IMG/VR virus record: IMGVR_UViG_3300009011_000002 | Coordinates: 124,001 to 188,000 of that record | DNA: 64,000 nt | Strand: one strand, 5' to 3' | Shown here: one piece after another, positions 46,891 to 58,319 of the stretch | Layout: each line of letters starts with the position of its first letter | How positions within the stretch are numbered: the stretch's first letter is position 1 | Notes under the pieces: model-generated | Told to the model about the DNA's origin: nothing | Databases searched by the model: none | The model's input: only the letters and a program-made list of their open reading frames with translations | Program-made: the position numbers and the translations under genes

Positions 46891-47331
46891 TTACCCCTTA
46901 GGCTTCTTCCAGCCGTAGTCAGCTTTCCAGAACACCAGTTCTTTACCTGGCCAATCAGAGAACACACTGTTCAACGCCATGATGTCGTATTCATCGAAAT
47001 CATAGGCAATCGAAATATGGGGGAGTGGGGTCTCGTAGGCATGCTGGTAACCGGCATCCCGCAAGCGGCGGAACTCTTCGTTGAGGTCCGGGCTGGTGAG
47101 GTGGAAGACTACACCATCACCGAGGGGTTCCAGCTTGGTGACGAATGCACGGAACTCACGCTCCGGGTGCAGTTCAGCCAGTGGGCGGTCGATACCACGG
47201 TCGTCGAAGATTATGGTGGAGTGCAGGTCATGCTTGGGGATCTGTACCCCACATTCGCCCAGGAGCTTGTAGATCTCCATGATGAACTCGGGTTTCAGTT
47301 CTGCGGCTACGTAGCTGTAGTCACGTTCCAT
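46891..47331 (-). CDS. acb1: Acb1/T4 gp57B-like 2H phosphoesterase (anti-CBASS nuclease)
   Basis: YVAA, LHSTI and H.Y...PHISIAY motifs, 146 aa, C-terminal Trp, matching T4 gp57B/Acb1 layout. Confidence 0.8.
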   Translation of the reverse strand: MERDYSYVAAELKPEFIMEIYKLLGECGVQIPKHDLHSTIIFDDRGIDRPLAELHPEREFRAFVTKLEPLGDGVVFHLTSPDLNEEFRRLRDAGYQHAYETPLPHISIAYDFDEYDIMALNSVFSDWPGKELVFWKADYGWKKPKG

Positions 47332-48998: not shown

Positions 48999-49390
48999 AC
49001 CTTGCCCTTTAGTCGGTTGTTGTCCGTAATGGAAAGAACTTCAATTTTCAAGTCATTCATCAGGGTGCAATGATCGTTGTCGATTTTCGTGGCAACATAC
49101 ACATAGGTCTGACCGTGTAGAATGCCCTTTAAATCACCATCCACCCAACGCTTGTTAATGACATGAACAACCTCACCTACATACTTGCCTTCACTGTAAG
49201 AGAATCGACAGTGGATGTCTACGGTGTGGTCTTTATAGGGAAGATCATACACGACACATAGCGCCTGGCAGGTACGCCAGAAACCAAAAGTGAGTGCTTC
49301 TTCGTAAGAAATCTGGCGATTGCGTCTAAGGTACAGCGTGGCTATCCTTACCGACATCGCCGGATGAGGGTTAAAGTGGGCTGGGTCCAT
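48983..49390 (-). CDS. hypothetical protein (possible degenerate WxxW module)
   Basis: YLRRNRQISYEEALTFG resembles the module's second helix. Confidence 0.6.
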   Translation of the reverse strand: MDPAHFNPHPAMSVRIATLYLRRNRQISYEEALTFGFWRTCQALCVVYDLPYKDHTVDIHCRFSYSEGKYVGEVVHVINKRWVDGDLKGILHGQTYVYVATKIDNDHCTLMNDLKIEVLSITDNNRLKGKVWPST

Positions 49391-49890
49391 TAAGCAACCT
49401 TCTTGTATTCTTCGTCATGGACGGTAGGGTTACCGGCCGCTTCCTTGGCAAGCTTATCGGCTAGCTCGTTATCGGGAATACCCGCGTGGGCTTTAACCTT
49501 GATAAACGTCACCTTGTTCACCGCCAGCAGTTCGTGCATGATCCGCCACAGATCTTGGTTCTTGATCGGCTGTTGGGTCTTCCACGAAATGTAACCACTT
49601 CGGTTCCAACCCTTCAACCATTTGGTCGAACAGTCAATTGTGTACTGCGAGTCTGTGTAGATCTCGAAATGTTTACCCGGGCCGAATTCTTCCAGTGTCG
49701 CAATAACCCCCATGATTTCCATACGGTTATTGGTCGTCAAGTAGTAGCCCTTAGAGAGTGTGACCATCAGGTCTCCGCATCTCACTACCGACGCATAGCC
49801 CCCAGGACCGGGGTTGTTCAAGGCGCTACCATCCGTGTGCGCCTTGATTACGACTGGAGGCGTTTTACTCTTCGCCGCCTTTTTGGCCAT
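49390..49890 (-). CDS. rnhA: ribonuclease HI
   Basis: TDGS..NPGPGG, TNNRME, TDSQY, KNQDLW, VKAHAG..DNELAD. Confidence 0.95.
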   Translation of the reverse strand: MAKKAAKSKTPPVVIKAHTDGSALNNPGPGGYASVVRCGDLMVTLSKGYYLTTNNRMEIMGVIATLEEFGPGKHFEIYTDSQYTIDCSTKWLKGWNRSGYISWKTQQPIKNQDLWRIMHELLAVNKVTFIKVKAHAGIPDNELADKLAKEAAGNPTVHDEEYKKVA

Positions 49891-50911
49891 CAGTTTCTCC
49901 TCGCGGGTCAAAGTGCCCCATACGTTCCATCGCCTCGATAACTTTCATACGAGACTGAATGGAGTCAATAACGAACTGCGCTTGACTTCGGGTGAAGTCA
50001 CAGATCGGACAGCCATCCGCAACCATGTTGAGAATTTCATTTTGGAAAGTCTCATCAAACTTACGGTCAACTTCGACGCTGATATAACTCTTGTGCGAAT
50101 CGACACAATAAATACCGTCGCCAGTGTGGTAAAAGTAGTAGAAGGTGTCTGGGGTATCAATCCGACAAAATTGGAACTGGTCCCATACTTGGAACTGGAT
50201 CGGCTTGAAGCGCATGTCATTCCAGTGGCCCTTCAGCAACAGGATGCCAGTTTGACAGTCAACACTGATGCCATTCAGAAATGCACGCAACAGGATCAAC
50301 TTCCCACCTTGTGCGACGAGGTGAGAGTTCTTCAACTCACTCGTCTGAATGTCAATGCCGTACACGGAGTACAGGGAGGAGTCGTAGATCGAACTGCTGC
50401 GAATGTAAACATCCGCGACACTGTCCGTCTCCGTCCCATCCATATTGCGATCGGACTCAGCTGGCAGCCGGGTGTTTTCCAGGTGGGTAGATTCCAAGTG
50501 GGCACTCTCCACATCCCGGGAGAAGATATTGGACCACTCCTTGTTGAACCCGATGTAGGAATCCCGCATGTAGCAGTTGGTCACATTGGCGTGGACGATG
50601 GTGTTGTTCTCTCGCAGCTTGATACCGTCCACTGTGCTGTCGACGACAGTTAGGGTAGCGAGGTGGCGGTTAGCTTCAAAGTCCTTTGCATAGAGCCTGA
50701 CAGAGCTCTTCCCATCGACAGTGAGCATCAGGGCCGTGTCGTTCACCGGAATACGGTAAATGTCGTCCCCGTTGACCGACGCATTACCCATGTGCTCTGT
50801 AAGCACTCCCTGGGCATTTGGAGCTACGTTGATCTGTTGAGGGATCAGGCGAACGCCGTCCATGTACACTTCGCTGTTGAATTCGAATTTCTCAGTCATG
50901 GCAAATCTCAT
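49865..50911 (-). CDS. beta-helix-like repeat protein, paralog of 50963..52450
   Basis: short S/N-x-hydrophobic repeats; C-terminal FVIDSIQSRMKVI. Confidence 0.7.
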   Translation of the reverse strand: MRFAMTEKFEFNSEVYMDGVRLIPQQINVAPNAQGVLTEHMGNASVNGDDIYRIPVNDTALMLTVDGKSSVRLYAKDFEANRHLATLTVVDSTVDGIKLRENNTIVHANVTNCYMRDSYIGFNKEWSNIFSRDVESAHLESTHLENTRLPAESDRNMDGTETDSVADVYIRSSSIYDSSLYSVYGIDIQTSELKNSHLVAQGGKLILLRAFLNGISVDCQTGILLLKGHWNDMRFKPIQFQVWDQFQFCRIDTPDTFYYFYHTGDGIYCVDSHKSYISVEVDRKFDETFQNEILNMVADGCPICDFTRSQAQFVIDSIQSRMKVIEAMERMGHFDPRGETDGQKGGEE

Positions 50912-50962: not shown

Positions 50963-52450
50963 TTAATTGTCGAGCACGTCGTCCCAACGATCGAAACGAC
51001 CTTCCACGGTACGTACGATCTCGGTAGCCGAGTCCAGGATGCGGATCATTTCCAGACGCGACATTACCGCATCTACCGCATACTTGATGATGCTTTGTGC
51101 CAGCGGGTTGTTGTCAGGTGCTGGGGCGATTTCTTCCCAGCGGTAAGCGCGGCCGGAGATCACTTCGGTGACCACCTTCTCGATCGCTTCACGATCGTCG
51201 GTGAGCAGGATGCGCTTCGGTGTGCCGGTGAAGATATAGATATCCGCTTCGGTAGCCGAGGTACGACCCATGTGCAGTGTATCGGTCGGCAGGTCAACCT
51301 TGAGGAAGTTGAACTTGTTCTGCATGTTCAGCGCACGCTGGGAGATGTGCTCGCCGTTCAGGGAGAGGTTACGCAGGGTAACATGCCCTTCGCAATGCAC
51401 CGACGCTTCGACTGCATTCACGCGTTCCAGGAAGACTGTGGAACCTTTGATCTCCGCATGATCGAGGTAACCCTCGACAACACGCAGGTAACGATCCGAT
51501 ACCAGCGTGGAGCCTGTCACCGTAACCTTCGAGTAGAACCCTTCCGGTACCTGAGAGTCGGCGATCTGCGAACGGCGCAGACGCAGACGTTCGTGACGGT
51601 GACGTTTGAACTTGAATTCCTTGTCGGTAGTACCCCATGGCTTGAGCGACTGACGGCTTCCATACCGGTAACCCTGGTATTCACGCTGGGCACGAATGAC
51701 GGACACATTCATCACCGAGTTCTTCACGTCAACGTTGTGCAGCTGGTTCTCACCCAGGAACAGGTTGTTCTCGCTGCTCGAGTTGATGAGCACCACTTCC
51801 GCTGGCATGGACGAACGACGGGAGACGTAGCAGTCGTAATCATCGCCATGACCCAGCTTGTTCAGTTCCATGACCACGCTGGACTTGTCGTCGAGGTAGT
51901 AGGTCAGGGTAATGCCGTCAACAACGACGTAGTATTCGCTGATGGCGGTGTCGTCCAGGCCGTACAGGCTGAATTCCATGCGCGGCTGTTGGATACCGGC
52001 ATTGTCCTTCGCAGGGTCAACGATTCGGCCACGGTGGATCTTCAAACCAGTACGACTCGGCGCAATCTGCATGCTGTTGACCACCACGTAAGGCGGTTCC
52101 AGCATGGCGATGTCACGCTCGGTCAGAGCGACCTTGTCCGGGTAGATCTGCATGTACGGCTTGCCGTCACCGTTGAAGAGGTTTACTGCCTTCACGGGTT
52201 CAGCAGTCGTGTCATACGACCACGGTAAGCCAGTAAAGGCGGGATCGGTGCTGGTGACCAGGGTCTTTCCCTCGTGGTCCTTACCGACCTCTTTGATGGC
52301 AGGTTTAGCGGCACCTGCCTGGCTGGCGTTCTTGATCTTCTTGGCGACCATGGCTTCCACGGCTACCGGAACATCGGCCTTGGCGATCAAGTCTTTGGTA
52401 ACGTCCTTGACCACTTGATCTTTGTCTTTTACTGCAGTTTCTTTAGCCAC
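50963..52450 (-). CDS. beta-helix-like repeat protein, paralog of 49865..50911
   Basis: C-terminal YAVDAVMSRLEMI; F...D.P.DT shared. Confidence 0.7.
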   Translation of the reverse strand: MAKETAVKDKDQVVKDVTKDLIAKADVPVAVEAMVAKKIKNASQAGAAKPAIKEVGKDHEGKTLVTSTDPAFTGLPWSYDTTAEPVKAVNLFNGDGKPYMQIYPDKVALTERDIAMLEPPYVVVNSMQIAPSRTGLKIHRGRIVDPAKDNAGIQQPRMEFSLYGLDDTAISEYYVVVDGITLTYYLDDKSSVVMELNKLGHGDDYDCYVSRRSSMPAEVVLINSSSENNLFLGENQLHNVDVKNSVMNVSVIRAQREYQGYRYGSRQSLKPWGTTDKEFKFKRHRHERLRLRRSQIADSQVPEGFYSKVTVTGSTLVSDRYLRVVEGYLDHAEIKGSTVFLERVNAVEASVHCEGHVTLRNLSLNGEHISQRALNMQNKFNFLKVDLPTDTLHMGRTSATEADIYIFTGTPKRILLTDDREAIEKVVTEVISGRAYRWEEIAPAPDNNPLAQSIIKYAVDAVMSRLEMIRILDSATEIVRTVEGRFDRWDDVLDN

Positions 52451-54427
52451 TTATGCCGCTCCTTGTTTGATGTGCTTGATGAGAGTGTCGATAGAATCGA
52501 CTTGGGTTCCGCTCACTATACGGATACCCAGCTCAGCTGCTTTTAACAGTTTACTGTTACTAGGCTTCTCCCCCACGATGAGGAAGTCGCAGTCCTTACT
52601 AACGGTGTTTACCAGTTCAACCCCGTGGTGTTCGAAATACCGTGTCAACAGATCACGAGGTTGACCCAATTCACCGGTAACGCAACCTTTGAGACCACTG
52701 CCCAGGAAAGCCATTGGAACCTCCTTGAGGGTGCTCAGTAACAAAAGGGCATTATCCCTCCAGTCGGGGTCTTTGGCTGTCTCGGCGATCGGAAGTGCTA
52801 AGCCCGCTGAGAACCCGGAGATCTTTACGATGTTGTCCACATCACCGAACCAATCCAGCAAGGCCGGTGAAGAACCGGAACCCCACGCCACCGCCAGCTT
52901 ACGCGCGCGGGTCAAACTGATGTTAGGTAAACCCAACGCACAGATGATTCGATCCAGTGGTTGTTCTTTGGCGCACTTAACCGAATCAAGGTTGCCATTG
53001 TTCAGCCACGGGTACTCGACAGCAAAGATATCCGCTGGGCGGTTGACATGACCCTGGTCGATCAAACGACCCATGACAATTGGACCGATACCACGGATAT
53101 CCAGACACCGTTTACCCACCATTGCCAAACACCGCATCAGAAGCTGTCCAGGACAGCCAGAGACGTTGTTACAGAAGAGGTCGGCGCTGGTCTTGGTAAC
53201 GCGCAGTTCCAACACGGAACCGCAGTCAGGACACTCCGTAGGAGCTTCCAGCATCTTGCCTGTACCGTGATCAGCCACCACTGACACCTGAGGGATCACA
53301 TCACCGTTACGGGTGATCACTACCTTGGAGTCTTCCCGTAGCCCTAACTCCATGAAGTTGCGGTAGTTGTGGATCAAAGCCCGAGAACACCAAACCCCAC
53401 CCAGCTTAATCGCTTGGTAGATACCGGTCGGTACCACACGCCCCACTTTGCTGGTCGCCCAGTCGATGCTCTCGAATGGCGTGGTCGCTTCGGCAAACGG
53501 GAACTTGTACGCTCGAGCTGAATGACTAAAGCGGTTGTTGTGACCCAGTTCAGCAACCACGTTCAGGTCGTTGTGCTTGATCACGATACCGTCGGATGGC
53601 CAGTGAATGTCTTCACGGTTCTCTTTGATATCTTCAATGTCGCAAGGTGGTGCGGGACGGAACCCTGCTTCTGACCATTCCCCCAACAAGTGGCTGTACT
53701 CGGTTTGACCCAAGTTATTATCGCTCCAATAAATCCGGAACGACAACATCCCCAGTACAGCTTCGTCCTGGTTCTTCAACAACGCTCGTACCCAACCACT
53801 GACCGCATTACGTGGGTTAGCTTTCTCCTTGGTGGAAATCTCGTTGTACTGCCGGTAGTTCTCGTACGAGATAACCCCCTCGCCACGAATCTCCATGTCA
53901 GCCGGCCAATGACTCGGGATATATTCTGGAATGGAGTCGTCAAACAACCGGATGGAATGAGTAACATCCTCGCCGTCCAACCCACTGCCCCGGGTAAACA
54001 TCCCCACCCGTCGCCAGTTCTCATAACGAACGGATAAGGCTATGCCGTCCAACTTGACTTCGTACCAGTAGAAGGTATCGGGTGGAAACTTCTTCTGGAA
54101 CTCTTCCACTTCTTCCATCGAGTAGACTTTCTTCAAGCTGATCATGGGTTGATCGAACTTGATAATCTTCAAGCCTTCGTTGGTAGGGGTGTGAATTGGC
54201 ACAGGGCGCTGGTGAATGGCAAACAGTTCTGCCAAATCAGGACGGTGTTCCGCCAGCACATCCCAACGCTTCACCAGATCGTCGTAAACGTGGTTAGGGA
54301 TCTCTTGCCTGTCCTTATTAAAGAACAGATCCGCGTGGTAGGTGATCTGACGAGACAGGTTTTCCATCTCCTCGAAGATGACGTCCTGCTCGTCACTTTC
54401 GGTAGCGGGAGCAACTTGAAAGGCCAT
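52451..54427 (-). CDS. ligA: NAD-dependent DNA ligase
   Basis: EVKLDG, TRG.G..GED, EIRGE, NPRN, DGIVIK, GDVIP, Cys4 zinc finger, HhH, BRCT. Confidence 0.95.
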   Translation of the reverse strand: MAFQVAPATESDEQDVIFEEMENLSRQITYHADLFFNKDRQEIPNHVYDDLVKRWDVLAEHRPDLAELFAIHQRPVPIHTPTNEGLKIIKFDQPMISLKKVYSMEEVEEFQKKFPPDTFYWYEVKLDGIALSVRYENWRRVGMFTRGSGLDGEDVTHSIRLFDDSIPEYIPSHWPADMEIRGEGVISYENYRQYNEISTKEKANPRNAVSGWVRALLKNQDEAVLGMLSFRIYWSDNNLGQTEYSHLLGEWSEAGFRPAPPCDIEDIKENREDIHWPSDGIVIKHNDLNVVAELGHNNRFSHSARAYKFPFAEATTPFESIDWATSKVGRVVPTGIYQAIKLGGVWCSRALIHNYRNFMELGLREDSKVVITRNGDVIPQVSVVADHGTGKMLEAPTECPDCGSVLELRVTKTSADLFCNNVSGCPGQLLMRCLAMVGKRCLDIRGIGPIVMGRLIDQGHVNRPADIFAVEYPWLNNGNLDSVKCAKEQPLDRIICALGLPNISLTRARKLAVAWGSGSSPALLDWFGDVDNIVKISGFSAGLALPIAETAKDPDWRDNALLLLSTLKEVPMAFLGSGLKGCVTGELGQPRDLLTRYFEHHGVELVNTVSKDCDFLIVGEKPSNSKLLKAAELGIRIVSGTQVDSIDTLIKHIKQGAA

Positions 54428-54467
54428 AAGGTGCCTCTTTGAAATTTGAACTATCAGCTATAAGGCA

Positions 54468-54496
54468 AGCACTAGGGGGTTGCCCGCCCTAGTGCT
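54468..54496. terminator. intergenic hairpin
   Basis: AGCACTAGGG...CCCTAGTGCT. Confidence 0.5.
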
Positions 54497-54502
54497 CGAA
54501 GA

Positions 54503-54970
54503 TCATGCACAGACTTTGTTCTTTTCTGCCTGGAGGTCGTTCAGCAAACGGATGTCAATCAGGTCTTGATCTCGTTTGGCTTTTGGACGTTCAGGCTGGG
54601 CGTAACCACCCCGCTTCTGGATCATGAGGGTCAGCGGGTCGAAGATCTGAATACCTTCGACGTTGTGAATGCCGAAGTAGGTGTTACGCTTACGGATCCA
54701 GATCGGGGCTTCCTTGTCGTAATCCTCGCCGTGACCACTTTTGTACTGGAACGCTACGTCGACCATGGGGTGGACAATGACATTCTGATGGGCGGCGATC
54801 TTGAGGAACGATTCCTCATTCAACCACAGGTTAATGTCCTGGGTATTTTCACGCAACTCCATTGCAACTAACGCACCCCCACCGCCGACGACCATGTGGT
54901 CGAAAGGAACCGCATGATCTTCGAAAAGAGTACGCAGTCTCAAAGCGATTTCATAAGAGCTTCTGATCAT
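54503..54970 (-). CDS. Pol-beta superfamily nucleotidyltransferase-like protein
   Basis: VVGGGGAL...RENTQDIN; C-terminal QK...R.K..D..D. Confidence 0.65.
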   Translation of the reverse strand: MIRSSYEIALRLRTLFEDHAVPFDHMVVGGGGALVAMELRENTQDINLWLNEESFLKIAAHQNVIVHPMVDVAFQYKSGHGEDYDKEAPIWIRKRNTYFGIHNVEGIQIFDPLTLMIQKRGGYAQPERPKAKRDQDLIDIRLLNDLQAEKNKVCA

Positions 54971-54982
54971 TTCAAACCTTAC

Positions 54983-55423
54983 TCACGCCACGATCCGGGC
55001 GGTAAATCTGGATTGTTTAAGGATGTGTTCGAGTACCGCCACTTCGGCAAGATCGACCACACGTTTTTCTTCTTTACGGTTGGGGTGAGTTGCCAGGTAA
55101 CGCTTTTGCGTTAACATGGACTGAGGGCTGTAAATCCAGACACCGTCCACGCAGACAATGCCTGTATCCTCGTCCAAGATGTGCAGGTCGATGTCTTCGG
55201 CGTATTCGATACGCTCTGCGAAGCCTTCTTCCAGCAATACCGTTCTGCTACCTGAAACCCAACGGAAGACTGGAGCCAATACATCAGCATCCAGATCTTC
55301 CGCTTCATCACGGACACCCATCATTACCAGCGCTGCTCCCGCACTCAGTACTACGTTGTGCGGGTCCTCCTTCAGCTCCTGAACAAGCGCATTGTAACGT
55401 GCAATCACTTGATCCTTTTTCAT
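54983..55423 (-). CDS. Pol-beta superfamily nucleotidyltransferase-like protein (paralog)
   Basis: VLSAGAAL..GVRDEAEDLD; IDLH; C-terminal QK...R..K..DL. Confidence 0.7.
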   Translation of the reverse strand: MKKDQVIARYNALVQELKEDPHNVVLSAGAALVMMGVRDEAEDLDADVLAPVFRWVSGSRTVLLEEGFAERIEYAEDIDLHILDEDTGIVCVDGVWIYSPQSMLTQKRYLATHPNRKEEKRVVDLAEVAVLEHILKQSRFTARIVA

Positions 55424-55457: not shown

Positions 55458-55721
55458 TTAATGCACCAACTGAGGCAAGTGGTAGACCATGTTCTCGATG
55501 CTGCGAGGGTCCGCCATTTGGTTCAGTACGGTGTACCCAACGGGCTGTGTGCCCGTAGCATCAAAATACACCAGTACTTGGTTCATGCCAGCGAAGTTCA
55601 CGATGGCGGTTTGACCGTTAACAGGGTCAGCACTCCAGGTTACAGTAGCAGTACCTGGACCTTGTGCATCCGGGAAGAGGACGCCTTCTGCGTTTTGGTT
55701 CACTTGAAATTGAGTGTTCAT
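55458..55721 (-). CDS. hypothetical protein
   Basis: likely start MNTQFQ at 55721; first gene after a promoter. Confidence 0.55.
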   Translation of the reverse strand: MNTQFQVNQNAEGVLFPDAQGPGTATVTWSADPVNGQTAIVNFAGMNQVLVYFDATGTQPVGYTVLNQMADPRSIENMVYHLPQLVH

Positions 55722-55824
55722 ATATGTTCTCTTCTGGAATGCTTCATAACCATGGGATACACCAGTTCGAATACAACCAAAAGAGTCAGAGAAATGAACA
55801 CTCATCTCTCTGGACTCCACCGTA

Positions 55825-55854
55825 GTAATATAGGTTTATTAAATTACTACGGTG
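55825..55854 (-). promoter_or_regulatory. early promoter abutting the end of the SbcC-like gene
   Basis: AAACCTATATTAC at 55825-55837. Confidence 0.8.
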
Positions 55855-58319
55855 TTCTGGTTAACCTCCCCGGTGAGGGTAAGTCCTTCGTAACGCAAAG
55901 CCACGATGTTCGGCTTGTCGAACACACTGTACTGGCTAACGTAGTGAGAGACCAAGAAAAGTTGTCGGGCATCTGTACGCTGCGTGTATTCGCGGATGAA
56001 GTTAAAGAATCGCGTCCGTTTGATCTCATCCAAATAAGGCCCCACCTCATCCATAATCAGGGGGAACGGGAACGGGTGATACGGTGCCAAAACGAACCGC
56101 CACACCCAGTCAAGGATATCGATCTCACCACCACTGCAATCCGCGATGTCTGGAGAAGGAGAATAGTCGCCGGTCACTACAGGGAACTTGTAGGTCAGGT
56201 CACCGTTCTCTTTACCACAGTGCTTCACGTAGAGCGGGGTGTTCCAAATGTCCTTGATAATCACGTTAGCATTGCCACATACGGTCTTGATGAAGTCCAT
56301 CATCAGTTTGCCCAGCAATCCCTTATTGGGGCACAGACCGTTCATCCACACTTCTACAATCTTCAACCGACGCTTCAAGCGTTCGATATCCGACGAGATT
56401 GAATCGACCACCGCCGACAACGATTTGTTCTTGATAATCGAAGTCAGGATGTGTTCCTTATCCACCGACAACTCGTGGATACGTGTATCAACCGATTGAC
56501 GGAGGGTTACCTTACTCTGGTTCCCCAAGCCCTGGACAACTTCCTTACGCAGTTGTTCTAACCGCAACAGGTCGTCGTTATAAGACGTGATGGTTTTGAG
56601 TTGGCGTTGTAACCCTTCCAGACGTTGCTTGTGCACACGGATCAAACTGTTCTGAGTGATGAGCTCTTTCTCAGTGTGAGCCACATGGTTCGCAATATCC
56701 AAGACCTTGTTCTTGTCTAAGACGTTTAAACGCGCGTGTAGCACGCGTTTCTCACCTTCCAGTAGTCCGAGTTGGTCGTTGAGCTTTTCACGCTCACAGT
56801 AGGCTTGCAGAGCGTTACAGAGCCGCGCATTGGTGACCTTGCCTACTTCAAACTCTTTGATCAACTCTGGCAAGATGCGGACGTGGTTATTCTCCCGAAC
56901 CATGGTAAACAACTGGTTCATGGAGCTATACCATTCTGCGTCATTGTCGATCAGCAGTTTGAGACGACTTTGTTCTTTCTCCAGTTTCTCAATCTGGTTC
57001 AGAACACCCTCGTAACTCTTCTGGATCTTCTCGGCATCACCCGGTTGCACACCCCGCTTGAACTGGTGAGTACAGTCAGGGCATTCGATCAGGTCCATGT
57101 TCTGGATATGCTCCAGGTCATGTTTAAGACCTTGCGAAGTGAGGGTCAAGTTACGAATCTGAACGGTGTTCTGTTCATACGTCGTCAAGTAACCCTTATA
57201 GGTAGTGCCTGTCAGTCCTGCATCACTGGCAACAGTGACACGGTGGAGGTAAGACATAAAGTGATCGGTGATTCCCCGCAGACCTGTCAGATCGGCAGAT
57301 GGGTCTTCGAACACCGGGTAACGTTCCAGCGTCAAATCCCATTCGGCTAACTGATTGACAATCCGGAGTTCTTCCGCCTGTACTGTCTTCGCTTGGTTTT
57401 CGAGCAGTTCGGGGTCCTTGAGGAACTCTTCCATGCCATCCAAGAAGCCAGCGTTGTCGCTGATGATGCCCGACAACACAGCTGCTTGTTCCTGATGGTA
57501 GTCGATAATGTCTTCGGCTGTTTCAATTGCTGAACGAAGTTCAGGCTCTGTCAGGAAGAACCCACTCACCTTGTTCACAGCCAACTGATCCGCTAACCAC
57601 GTAAACCGCTGGATCTTCTCTTGCAGTTCGCCATCAACGGTAATACCTTCCAACTGACCGCGTACCAACAAGGATTGCTTGAGGTCCACATCGATCAGCT
57701 TGATGCGCTGTTCCAGTTGTTCAATGCCGCACTCGTTGATCGCAATCAGCTTACGGTTCTCTTCGGCAAACCGTTGGGCTTGGTTCTTGATCGCCGCGCG
57801 GAGTTCGTTACGTTCCGTCTTAAGCTTGTTATAGCGACTCATGGCGTATTCCGTATCGTTTGGATACAGTTCCATGAGAATGTCTTTACGACGTGCTGGT
57901 GACATGGCAGAGAAGCGGTCGGTGATACGAATACCACCCAAGAACTTCAGGATATTCAAACTGGCCTTGAGGTGGTTCTCGACCAATTCCTTCTGTACGG
58001 TGTACGTACCCCCGGTGTTCAGTTCTTTACCGACTTCATCACCTTGTTCGTACACTTTGAAACTGTGGCCGGTGCCCGTGTGGGTATGCGAATCCAACAC
58101 GTACAGTCTGCCGTCGATAAACCATTCCGTCTTCTTACGGCCATCTTTGTAGTTGGCGTTCTCAGGCGGGAAGGGATGGACTTCTTTCAGAATACTGGTT
58201 TTACCCGAACCGTTAGCAGAGATGAAAAGGTTTACCAGTTCATCTGTATCCAGTTCTACTTTATGGATATTGCTGCTTAACAGAGGGATATAATTCTCTA
58301 ATGTCAGTTTGAGCAACAT
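55839..58319 (-). CDS. sbcC: SbcC/Rad50-like SMC ATPase
   Basis: Walker A NGSGKT, coiled coils, CPDC zinc hook, CSGGE signature, LIMDE Walker B, VSH. Confidence 0.92.
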   Translation of the reverse strand: MLLKLTLENYIPLLSSNIHKVELDTDELVNLFISANGSGKTSILKEVHPFPPENANYKDGRKKTEWFIDGRLYVLDSHTHTGTGHSFKVYEQGDEVGKELNTGGTYTVQKELVENHLKASLNILKFLGGIRITDRFSAMSPARRKDILMELYPNDTEYAMSRYNKLKTERNELRAAIKNQAQRFAEENRKLIAINECGIEQLEQRIKLIDVDLKQSLLVRGQLEGITVDGELQEKIQRFTWLADQLAVNKVSGFFLTEPELRSAIETAEDIIDYHQEQAAVLSGIISDNAGFLDGMEEFLKDPELLENQAKTVQAEELRIVNQLAEWDLTLERYPVFEDPSADLTGLRGITDHFMSYLHRVTVASDAGLTGTTYKGYLTTYEQNTVQIRNLTLTSQGLKHDLEHIQNMDLIECPDCTHQFKRGVQPGDAEKIQKSYEGVLNQIEKLEKEQSRLKLLIDNDAEWYSSMNQLFTMVRENNHVRILPELIKEFEVGKVTNARLCNALQAYCEREKLNDQLGLLEGEKRVLHARLNVLDKNKVLDIANHVAHTEKELITQNSLIRVHKQRLEGLQRQLKTITSYNDDLLRLEQLRKEVVQGLGNQSKVTLRQSVDTRIHELSVDKEHILTSIIKNKSLSAVVDSISSDIERLKRRLKIVEVWMNGLCPNKGLLGKLMMDFIKTVCGNANVIIKDIWNTPLYVKHCGKENGDLTYKFPVVTGDYSPSPDIADCSGGEIDILDWVWRFVLAPYHPFPFPLIMDEVGPYLDEIKRTRFFNFIREYTQRTDARQLFLVSHYVSQYSVFDKPNIVALRYEGLTLTGEVNQNTVVI

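What the first reader, a model, noticed from the sequence alone, without database searches (positions are those of the whole stretch)
54503..55423. Tandem minimal nucleotidyltransferase pair with one altered DxD
Seen: two ~150-aa paralogs share G-x-A-L...R...D and C-terminal QK...R..K..DL. 54983 keeps D-L-D, while 54503 has D-I-N. They lie downstream of the early promoter at 55825 and upstream of the ligase. Knowledge: this pattern fits Pol-beta-fold NTases of the AbiEii/MenT-like group, some of which modify tRNA 3' ends. Inference: an active/regulatory pair or heterodimer acting on tRNA or protein, or producing or interfering with nucleotide signals.
Basis: partly seen in the sequence, partly recalled or inferred. 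Interest (0 to 1): 0.6.

Follow-up and report, generated by a model that had tools for sequence, protein, structure and literature searches.

The report
Jumbo-phage nucleotidyltransferase with dead twin
Two neighbouring small genes of an EL-like jumbo phage encode an uncharacterised minimal nucleotidyltransferase and a conserved, catalytically disabled copy of it; they sit in their own small unit between DNA-repair genes, and what they act on is unknown.

Summary
ORF A (54983-55423, minus strand, 146 aa) and ORF B (54503-54970, minus strand, 155 aa) are paralogues: BLASTP E 2e-11, profile-profile probability 99.6%.

Both fold with high confidence (pLDDT 93) as minimal Pol-beta nucleotidyltransferases. 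The closest solved structures are TM1012, MenT1, MenT3, LnuA and ANT(2'')-Ia, at Z 9-10.5.

A keeps the Gly motif, D43-x-D45-x-D47, D79 and H81. B has D-x-N-x-W, plus W and R at the D79 and H81 positions. These changes hold across a well-supported B clade, so B is a selected pseudo-enzyme and not decay.

The window comes from a 226.8-kb phage related to Pseudomonas phage EL; A matches EL gp120 and B matches gp121. The order SbcC-like, small ORF, A, B, NAD ligase recurs in about 20 diverged EL-like contigs (one lacks B). A promoter-like motif precedes the unit and a hairpin follows it.

No Pfam, NCBIfam or PADLOC model matches, so the pair is not a sequence-level AbiEii/MenT member. The family is an unnamed one (phrog_12854) seen on jumbo-phage contigs.

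The substrate is unknown. The heterodimer prediction gave no verdict. In three lineages A has also lost its acidic residues.

Fold supported; membership, mechanism and function open.

The parts
55825..55852 (-). Promoter-like motif (AGTA box, spacer, AAACC-TATATTAC) directly after the stop of the SbcC-like gene
   Evidence: TATATTAC occurs 6 times in the window, all on the minus strand, against 0.49 expected. Seven relaxed TA[TC]ATTA[CT] sites share an upstream xAGTA box. AAACCTA[TC]ATTA[CT] stands at the same place in all 15 EL-like loci examined. The EL record annotates a 'putative phage promoter' at this site. Its timing class was not tested.
55787..55812 (-). Hairpin in the leader, followed by a T-run and a conserved GGTTGTATTCG-ACTG box
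   Evidence: Flagged as terminator-like with 11 pairs. A hairpin plus the box recurs in most of the 15 EL-like loci compared, about ten of them. Its role is unknown.
55458..55721 (-). Small conserved ORF (87 aa from the ATG at 55721; orthologue of EL gp119), first gene of the unit
   Evidence: tblastn finds it at the same position in all EL-like loci, 31-49% identity. It has only a weak phrog_16812 hit and no Pfam hit. The 120-aa GTG form listed runs into the leader hairpin and is probably over-extended.
54983..55423 (-). NTase A (146 aa): minimal Pol-beta-fold nucleotidyltransferase with the catalytic set intact (G29, R38, D43, D45, D47, D79, H81, K107, R116, K120, D124, E127); orthologue of EL gp120
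54503..54970 (-). NTase B (155 aa): paralogue of the same fold with D-x-N-x-W and W/R in place of the acidic set; the C-terminal QKR, R, KR and D..D residues are kept; orthologue of EL gp121
54466..54498 (-). GC-rich hairpin straight after the stop of B, before the ligase gene
   Evidence: The 83-nt stretch window:54428-54510 (minus strand), which contains the hairpin, folds at -28.7 kcal/mol, z -2.7. A strong hairpin of different sequence stands at the same place in all 11 loci checked, followed by a CUUUAU/CUUAUAG-like box. It is likely the 3' boundary of the unit, as terminator or processing site; this is inferred.

Best explanation
**What it is.** The two genes encode an uncharacterised family of minimal (about 140 aa) Pol-beta-fold nucleotidyltransferases found on phiKZ/EL-like jumbo-phage contigs.

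**Protein A (shown and inferred).** A has every residue expected of a working enzyme. These are a Gly-rich NTP loop, R38, three alternating Asp on strand 2 (D43/D45/D47), D79 and H81 on the neighbouring strand, and a C-terminal helical pair carrying K107, R116, K120 and D124..E127. The order of these residues mirrors motifs I-IV of MenT/AbiEii. That A is catalytically active is inferred, not shown.

**Protein B (shown and inferred).** B is an old duplicate. It keeps the fold, the Gly loop, R, and all the C-terminal Lys/Arg/Asp residues. The metal-binding carboxylates are replaced by invariant Asn, Trp, Trp/Tyr and Arg. I infer that B can no longer transfer nucleotides but still binds a nucleotide or a substrate end.

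**How the pair works (weakly supported inference).** Both genes are expressed together with a small upstream ORF as one unit, bounded by a conserved promoter-like motif and a conserved hairpin. The unit is embedded between an SbcC-like ATPase and the NAD-dependent DNA ligase and RNase H. My most likely reading is that A transfers an NMP from an NTP to the 3'-OH of a polynucleotide end (RNA/tRNA or DNA), and that B acts as a non-catalytic partner or regulator.

**Status of each step.** Shown: paralogy, fold, residue pattern, conservation of the pair and its synteny. Inferred: A active and B inactive. Not shown: A-B contact, the substrate and the biological role.
For: - **Paralogy:**
- **Fold:** AF2 pLDDT 92.7 and 93.5. 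For A, VIA-align gives TM1012 Z 10.5, MenT1 9.9, MenT3 9.6, LnuA 9.6 and ANT(2'') 8.8. For B, MenT1 9.8, TM1012 9.6 and ANT(2'') 9.3.
- **Residue census over 177 family sequences, non-B members:** G29 95%, R38 97%, T41 86%, D43 93%, D45 96%, D47 69%, D/E79 62%, H81 83%, K107 87%, D124 88%.
- **Residue census, B-type members:** defined in that census by N at position 45; W47 84%, aromatic at position 79 84%, R81 84%; K107, R116 and D124 kept.
- **B is one clade:** SH-aLRT 98. In an 18-sequence B alignment N47, W49 and R93 are invariant.
- **Pair and synteny:** SbcC-like, gp119-like, A, B, ligase, (495-aa ORF), RNase H recurs in EL and about 20 metagenomic EL-like contigs, with A at 44-57% identity.
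- **Unit boundaries:** promoter-like motif and terminal hairpin are conserved in position.
- **MenT motif definitions used for comparison:** PMC7450476, PMC11375011, PMC11162799. The N-terminal alignment offset fits T41/D43 of A matching T39/D41 of MenT1: model residues 4..139 align to chain residues 2..166.
- **Link to nucleic-acid or nucleotide metabolism elsewhere:** single-copy relatives sit next to an SbcC-like gene (L017) or next to RNR and dCTP deaminase (L015). The closest bacterial structural neighbours include fusions to RNase HII and RNase III.
Against: - No activity, binding or expression data exist.
- The heterodimer prediction scored 0.00; this is no verdict either way.
- A is acidic (pI 4.9, net charge -9) and B is near neutral. 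This is unlike the basic tRNA-binding MenT toxins and more like ANT(2'').
- In three EL-like lineages (L033, L034, L035) the A orthologue has itself lost the acidic residues, and L033 has no B. Catalysis is therefore dispensable in part of the lineage.
- Relatives fused to GNAT, or to GNAT plus NUDIX, fit small-molecule chemistry as well as RNA-end chemistry.
- Gene neighbourhood in a phage replication block is weak evidence for a shared pathway.
- The residue correspondence to MenT motifs rests on motif order and alignment ranges. No residue-level superposition was done.
Confidence: 0.45

Rival explanations
1. Small-molecule nucleotidylyltransferase of the ANT(2'')/Lnu kind. A adenylylates a metabolite, an antibiotic-like compound or a nucleotide second messenger. 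B binds the same ligand without turning it over.
For: ANT(2'')-Ia and LnuA are among the best structural hits at Z 8.8-9.6. A is acidic, as aminoglycoside-binding ANTs are (the ANT property is from my own knowledge). Family members are fused to GNAT acetyltransferase and to GNAT plus NUDIX. Language-model neighbours include clusters carrying the Aminoglyc_resit family.
Against: There is no sequence-level match to any ANT or Lnu model. The C-terminal K / D..D pattern and the T-x-D-x-D signature look more like MenT/AbiEii. The genomic context is DNA metabolism. No candidate ligand is known.
Confidence: 0.2
2. The conserved function is ligand binding and not catalysis. Both proteins would act as nucleotide- or RNA-end-binding regulators or sponges, for example against host nucleotide-signal immunity, and the intact acidic set of A in this phage would be partly vestigial.
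For: Carboxylates were lost repeatedly: in the whole B clade, in the second copies in L018 and L019, and in the A orthologues of L033-L035. Meanwhile R38, K107, R116, K120 and D124 persist. B has invariant Trp residues at former active-site positions. An Acb1-like anti-CBASS gene lies about 7 kb downstream in the same gene block, and next to the NTase in L021.
Against: A keeps D43/D45 in 17-18 of about 20 EL-like lineages and in over 93% of the wider family, which argues for selection on catalysis. There is no similarity to known sponges beyond a trivial helical overlap with Tad1 at Z 6.
Confidence: 0.15
3. AbiE/MenAT-like toxin-antitoxin pair carried by the phage. A would be a MenT-like tRNA-extending toxin and B its antitoxin, by analogy with the NTase-like C-terminal domain of AbiEi.
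For: Structural hits to MenT1, MenT3, MenT4 and to the AbiEi antitoxin domain. The genes form a tight tandem pair.
Against: The PF08843 HMM is not met even at E<=10. B has no winged-helix DNA-binding domain. The gene order is the reverse of AbiE (from my own knowledge). The pair is vertically inherited at a fixed place in a replication block and diverges like its neighbours, unlike a mobile TA module. A is acidic. No PADLOC hit.
Confidence: 0.1
4. B is a decaying duplicate without function.
For: It has lost the canonical catalytic residues.
Against: The reading frame is intact. The AF2 model has pLDDT 93.5. N47, W49 and R93 are invariant across orthologues down to 25% identity. B forms one well-supported clade and is present in all but one of the EL-like lineages examined.
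Confidence: 0.02

Closest known systems
MenT1 / MenT3 (DUF1814, AbiEii family) tRNA-extending nucleotidyltransferase toxins of Mycobacterium tuberculosis
   Same: Same Pol-beta NTase core plus a C-terminal helical part (Z 9.6-9.9 over 130-138 residues). Same order of signature residues: [ST]-x-D-x-D on strand 2, a further acidic residue on the next strand, a conserved Lys on the first C-terminal helix, and D..D on the last helix. The MenT residues are taken from PMC11375011, PMC7450476 and PMC11162799.
   Different: No HMM-level similarity. Only 146-155 aa, against 189-290 aa. Acidic and not basic. No unrelated antitoxin gene; the partner is a dead paralogue. Phage-encoded and syntenic in a replication block. 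In this window the Thr that MenT1 auto-phosphorylates is Ala in A.
TM1012 (DUF2204) and DUF6036 putative nucleotidyltransferases
   Same: TM1012 is the best solved structural match (Z 10.5, 124 residues aligned at 3.0 A) and is of similar size at 156 aa. A few distant family members give sub-threshold DUF6036 hits. DUF6036 and DUF2204 clusters are the nearest named neighbours in the ESM Atlas.
   Different: Those families have no known function either. The window proteins themselves score nothing against these models.
ANT(2'')-Ia and LnuA antibiotic nucleotidylyltransferases
   Same: Small two-part NTases of similar size, with Z 8.8-9.6. Like A, they are acidic.
   Different: No sequence-level relation. 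No resistance context. The pairing with a pseudo-enzyme is not a feature of those enzymes.
Pseudomonas phage EL gp120 and gp121 (phrog_12854)
   Same: Direct orthologues: 45% identity for A and 36% for B, in identical synteny gp118 SbcC-like, gp119, gp120, gp121, gp122 ligase.
   Different: Annotated only as hypothetical proteins. The literature searches found no paper that treats them.

Membership tests
Pol-beta nucleotidyltransferase fold superfamily | alpha-beta-alpha-beta core of the NTase fold | tested here: met
   AF2 pLDDT 92.7 and 93.5. All top PDB hits are NTases at Z 8-10.5 and cover nearly the whole chain.
Pol-beta nucleotidyltransferase fold superfamily | hG[GS] loop followed after 9-13 residues by [DE]h[DE]h on strand 2 | tested here: met
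   A has G29-A30 followed by D43-L-D45-A-D47 on predicted strand 44-48. B does not meet it, reading D-I-N-L-W.
Pol-beta nucleotidyltransferase fold superfamily | Third carboxylate on a neighbouring strand | tested here: inconclusive
   A has D79 on predicted strand 78-82, but D/E is kept at this position in only 62% of the family while H81 is kept in 83%. Spatial adjacency could not be measured because no coordinates were available. B has W here.
AbiEii / MenT (Pfam PF08843, DUF1814) | Match to the family HMM | tested here: not met
   No Pfam hit at E<=1. PF08843 finds nothing in the whole phage genome at E<=10, while it finds matches in the control genomes.
AbiEii / MenT (Pfam PF08843, DUF1814) | Four motifs: I and II metal ligands, III Lys, IV D..D | tested here: inconclusive
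   Analogous residues occur in the same order (T41/D43/D45, D79, K107, D124..E127) and the structural alignment ranges are compatible. No residue-level superposition was possible.
AbiEii / MenT (Pfam PF08843, DUF1814) | Cognate antitoxin (AbiEi/MenA) and toxicity | not testable with these tools
   No AbiEi-like wHTH gene is nearby. Toxicity needs an experiment.
DUF6036 (PF19502) / DUF2204 (PF09970) | Match to the family HMM | tested here: not met
   No hit for A or B. Only 3 of 90 relatives give sub-threshold DUF6036 hits.
Known anti-phage defence components (PADLOC), CD-NTases, MNT-HEPN | Match to a defence HMM, or a HEPN partner | tested here: not met
   No PADLOC hit for A or B. The partner B has the NTase fold and not the HEPN fold.
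phrog_12854 (phage protein family of unknown function) | Match to the family HMM | tested here: met
   A at E 4.1e-29 and B at E 5e-18, both over nearly the full length.

The most novel reading that the evidence does not exclude
The three-gene unit (small ORF, active NTase, pseudo-NTase) is a host-directed or counter-defence module of nucleus-forming jumbo phages. The pseudo-NTase, with its invariant Trp/Arg pocket, would capture a host immune nucleotide signal or an RNA 3' end. The active paralogue would cap or extend that target. This would be a mechanism not yet described for any phage NTase.
Probability: 0.12. Interest if true: 0.75.

Novelty: new variant of a known kind. Interest (0 to 1): 0.45.

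Why it matters
Minimal NTases of this branch include tRNA-poisoning toxins (MenT/AbiEii) and antibiotic-modifying enzymes. A phage-borne family with a fixed enzyme/pseudo-enzyme pair has not been characterised.

The profile search found 589 clusters at 50% identity. Every member whose context was examined lies on a jumbo-phage or phage-like contig, including EL, RP12, 201phi2-1, Phabio, Noxifer and PhiEaH1. The family is therefore a recurrent but unexplained component of nucleus-forming phages that are being developed for therapy.

Knowing its substrate would show one of two things. Either these phages edit nucleic-acid ends during replication and repair, or they manipulate host RNA or signalling molecules.

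The repeated, independent loss of catalytic residues also makes the family a clean case for studying how pseudo-enzymes arise.

Tried and rejected
- **Heterodimer prediction.** A plus B, each with its own alignment, scored 0.00, which is 'no verdict'. It is not used for or against binding.
- **Sequence searches of the Protein Data Bank.** Profiles of 29 and of 90 sequences returned only chance hits at E>0.2.
- **Family libraries.** Pfam, NCBIfam and PADLOC gave nothing for A, B or the small upstream ORF.
- **Near-identity DNA search of deposited phages.** No match, so the phage itself is not a deposited isolate in that collection.
- **Bacterial genome collection.** The search for related loci could not be run because no alignment had a stretch conserved enough. 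The distribution of the family in bacterial genomes was therefore not examined directly.
- **Literature.** Searches for EL gp120/gp121, DUF6036, Chimalliviridae plus nucleotidyltransferase, and the promoter octamer found nothing specific. The jumbo-phage comparative review PMC7824862 lists RlaP, CCA-adding and Thg1 NTases but not this family.
- **RlaP or CCA-adding enzyme.** Considered and rejected for lack of any HMM match and because of size.
- **B as a decaying pseudogene.** Considered and rejected on conservation.

Full report
**Anatomy**

The stated interval holds two minus-strand ORFs. A is 54983..55423 (146 aa) and B is 54503..54970 (155 aa). Twelve bases separate them, with an AAGG box before B.

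Upstream on the same strand lies a small ORF. It is best read as 87 aa from the ATG at 55721. Beyond it lies an 826-aa SbcC-like ATPase at 55839..58319 (phrog_77, E 2e-65).

Downstream lie four genes:
- an NAD-dependent DNA ligase at 52451..54427;
- a conserved 495-aa ORF of unknown function;
- RNase H at 49390..49911;
- further on, an Acb1-like 2H phosphoesterase at 46891..47331.

The window is bases 124001-188000 of a 226,773-bp virus record with direct terminal repeats. That genome holds only these two copies of the family.

A and B are paralogues. BLASTP gives 27% identity, E 2e-11. Both hit phrog_12854. Profile-profile probability is 99.6%.

**Identity of the phage and conservation of the pair**

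tblastn finds orthologues only in Pseudomonas phage EL and its relatives. A matches gp120 at 45% identity and B matches gp121 at 36%. More distant single copies occur in Ralstonia jumbo phages RP12, RP31 and FLC, and in Pseudomonas phage RVTF4. All are annotated as hypothetical.

The order orf977, baseplate gene (opposite strand), SbcC-like, gp119-like, A, B, ligase, orf495, RNase H is kept in EL and in every EL-like metagenomic contig retrieved. A diverges about as much as its neighbours: A 44-57%, SbcC-like 46-58%, ligase 37-51%.

Every B-type representative whose contig I fetched follows an A-type gene in the same arrangement.

**A bounded unit**

The octamer TATATTAC at 55825-55832 is one of six in the window. 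All six are on the minus strand, against 0.49 expected. The sites share an upstream AGTA box.

AAACCTA[TC]ATTA[CT] stands directly after the SbcC-like stop in all 15 loci compared. EL's record marks a putative promoter there.

Directly after the B stop there is a GC-rich hairpin; the 83-nt stretch holding it folds at -28.7 kcal/mol, z -2.7. A hairpin of different sequence occupies that position in all 11 loci checked.

The small ORF, A and B therefore look like one transcription unit set into a replication/repair block. That the motif is an 'early' promoter is my recollection of the phiKZ/EL literature. It was not verified here (one search found nothing).

**Fold**

With alignments of 29 sequences, AlphaFold2 gives pLDDT 92.7 for A and 93.5 for B.

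Foldseek and VIA-align place both among minimal NTases:

| Solved structure | Z for A | Z for B |
|---|---|---|
| TM1012 | 10.5 | 9.6 |
| MenT1 | 9.9 | 9.8 |
| MenT3/TglT | 9.6 | 8.8 |
| LnuA | 9.6 | 8.9 |
| Fungal NTase-like protein 5UVD | 9.6 | 9.0 |
| ANT(2'')-Ia | 8.8 | 9.3 |
| JHP933 | 8.4 | 8.0 |
| NTase-like C-terminal domain of AbiEi | 8.2 | 8.0 |

In BFVD the nearest models are uncharacterised proteins of RP12, EL, PhiEaH1, 201phi2-1, Noxifer, RSF1 and Phabio.

In the ESM Atlas the protein's own viral cluster has 109 members, 98% from viruses, and is auto-named 'Nucleotidyltransferase family protein'. The next neighbours are bacterial proteins of about 130 aa of unknown function, relatives fused to RNase HII or RNase III, and DUF6036, DUF2204, AbiEii and Aminoglyc_resit clusters.

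**Not a sequence-level member of a named family**

Pfam, NCBIfam and PADLOC give nothing. The PF08843 (AbiEii) and PF19502 (DUF6036) models find nothing in the genome at E<=10, although they do find matches in control genomes. Profiles find no PDB sequence.

A full HMMER profile search of 1.84 billion representatives finds 589 clusters at E<=1e-3 and 255 at E<=1e-10, mostly 130-160 aa. Those I traced lie on 170-310-kb contigs or beside phiKZ-type genes. Most of the 589 were not traced.

**Active versus disabled**

A census of 177 family sequences aligned to the profile gives these figures:

| Position (A numbering) | Non-B members (n=152) | B-type members (n=25) |
|---|---|---|
| 29 | G 95% | G 80% |
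| 38 | R 97% | R 96% |
| 41 | T 86% | T 80% |
| 43 | D 93% | D 80% |
| 45 | D 96% | N (the defining criterion) |
| 47 | D 69% | W 84% |
| 79 | D/E 62% | W/Y/F 84% |
| 81 | H 83% | R 84% |
| 107 | K 87% | K 92% |
| 116 | R 76% | R 96% |
| 124 | D 88% | D 100% |

In an alignment of 18 B orthologues that go down to 25% identity, N47, W49 and R93 are invariant. The B type forms one clade with SH-aLRT 98 in a quick maximum-likelihood tree of 161 sequences. B is therefore an old, selected pseudo-enzyme.

The residue order T-x-D-x-D, then D, then K, then D..D mirrors the four MenT/AbiEii motifs. In MenT1 these are T39, D41, K137 and D149/D152. In MenT3 they are S78, D80, D82, E146, K189 and D211 (PMC11375011, PMC7450476, PMC11162799). 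The alignment ranges fit this reading. I could not superpose residues, so the equivalence remains an inference.

**Complications**

- In three EL-like lineages the A orthologue has also lost its acidic residues (L033, L034, L035). L033 has no B, and L034 and L030 carry an extra truncated copy.
- Degenerate second copies arose independently in L018 and L019.
- A is acidic (pI 4.9) and B is near neutral.
- Relatives are fused to GNAT, and to GNAT plus NUDIX.
- The single complex prediction gave no verdict.

**Interpretation**

I commit to the following. A is a working Mg2+-dependent nucleotidyltransferase. B is a non-catalytic paralogue that keeps a ligand-binding pocket and serves A as partner or regulator. 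The pair is co-expressed with a small ORF.

The acceptor is most likely a polynucleotide 3' end. The reasons are the MenT-like motif set, the SbcC/ligase/RNase H context, the SbcC or RNR/dCTP-deaminase context of single-copy relatives, and the RNase-fused structural neighbours.

My confidences are about 0.95 for the fold, about 0.75 for 'A active, B inactive', about 0.35 for a physical A:B complex and about 0.45 for a nucleic-acid acceptor.

The rivals are a small-molecule NTase, a binding-only or sponge function, and an AbiE-like toxin-antitoxin pair. None is excluded.

**Novelty**

The NTase fold is known, and automatic naming has already attached 'nucleotidyltransferase' to the viral cluster. 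New here are three things: the definition of a jumbo-phage family outside the named Pfam families, the fixed enzyme/pseudo-enzyme pair in its own bounded unit, and the recurrent loss of catalytic residues. No paper found treats these proteins.

**Not done**

- No scan of bacterial genomes was run.
- No residue-level superposition was done.

Noticed in passing
window 46891-47331 (-): A 146-aa protein matches Pfam Acb1 (anti-CBASS 2H phosphoesterase) at 49.8 bits against a cut-off of 27. PHROGs and the EL record (gp126) call this family 'RNA ligase'. It is likely a cyclic-nucleotide-degrading counter-defence gene that is misnamed in phage records. In locus L021 its homologue lies about 1.7 kb upstream of that phage's NTase.
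   Followed up: partly
window 1695, 22585, 29897, 34586, 40888, 42657, 55825 (all minus strand): A bipartite promoter-like motif: an xAGTA box, then 11-12 nt, then TA[TC]ATTA[CT]. There are seven copies, all on the minus strand. The exact octamer occurs 6 times against 0.49 expected.
   Followed up: partly
window 55755-55812 (-), and the same place in L003-L012, L030: The leader of the small ORF holds a hairpin followed by a T-run and a conserved box GGTTGTATTCG[TA]ACTG. The hairpin sequence varies between phages while the box is kept. It could be an attenuator, a processing site or a second promoter.
   Followed up: no
window 54466-54498 (-); B-ligase spacers of L001, L003-L005, L010-L014, L031, L035: A strong GC-rich hairpin directly after the B stop is conserved in position but not in sequence. 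It is followed by a CUUUAU/CUUAUAG-like box just before the ligase gene.
   Followed up: partly
L033 3001-3447; L034 3001-3459; L035 3001-3429: In three EL-like lineages the A-type orthologue has lost the D-x-D-x-D and D79 residues. L033 lacks the B gene and carries an unrelated 137-aa ORF before A. L034 carries that ORF, a 106-aa truncated third paralogue and a B gene.
   Followed up: partly
P0085 (L025 6001-6849), P0154: Family members are fused C-terminally to a GNAT acetyltransferase (282 aa, on a phiKZ-like contig with a phiKZ_IP gene) and to GNAT plus NUDIX (426 aa).
   Followed up: partly
window 55458-55721 (-): An 87-aa ORF (EL gp119 orthologue) is always the first gene of the unit and has no recognisable family. 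The 120-aa GTG-start version listed mechanically overlaps the leader hairpin and is probably too long.
   Followed up: partly
window 50963-52450 (-): A 495-aa ORF (GTG start) of unknown function begins directly at the ligase stop. It is conserved after the ligase in all EL-like loci at 20-32% identity and has no Pfam hit.
   Followed up: no
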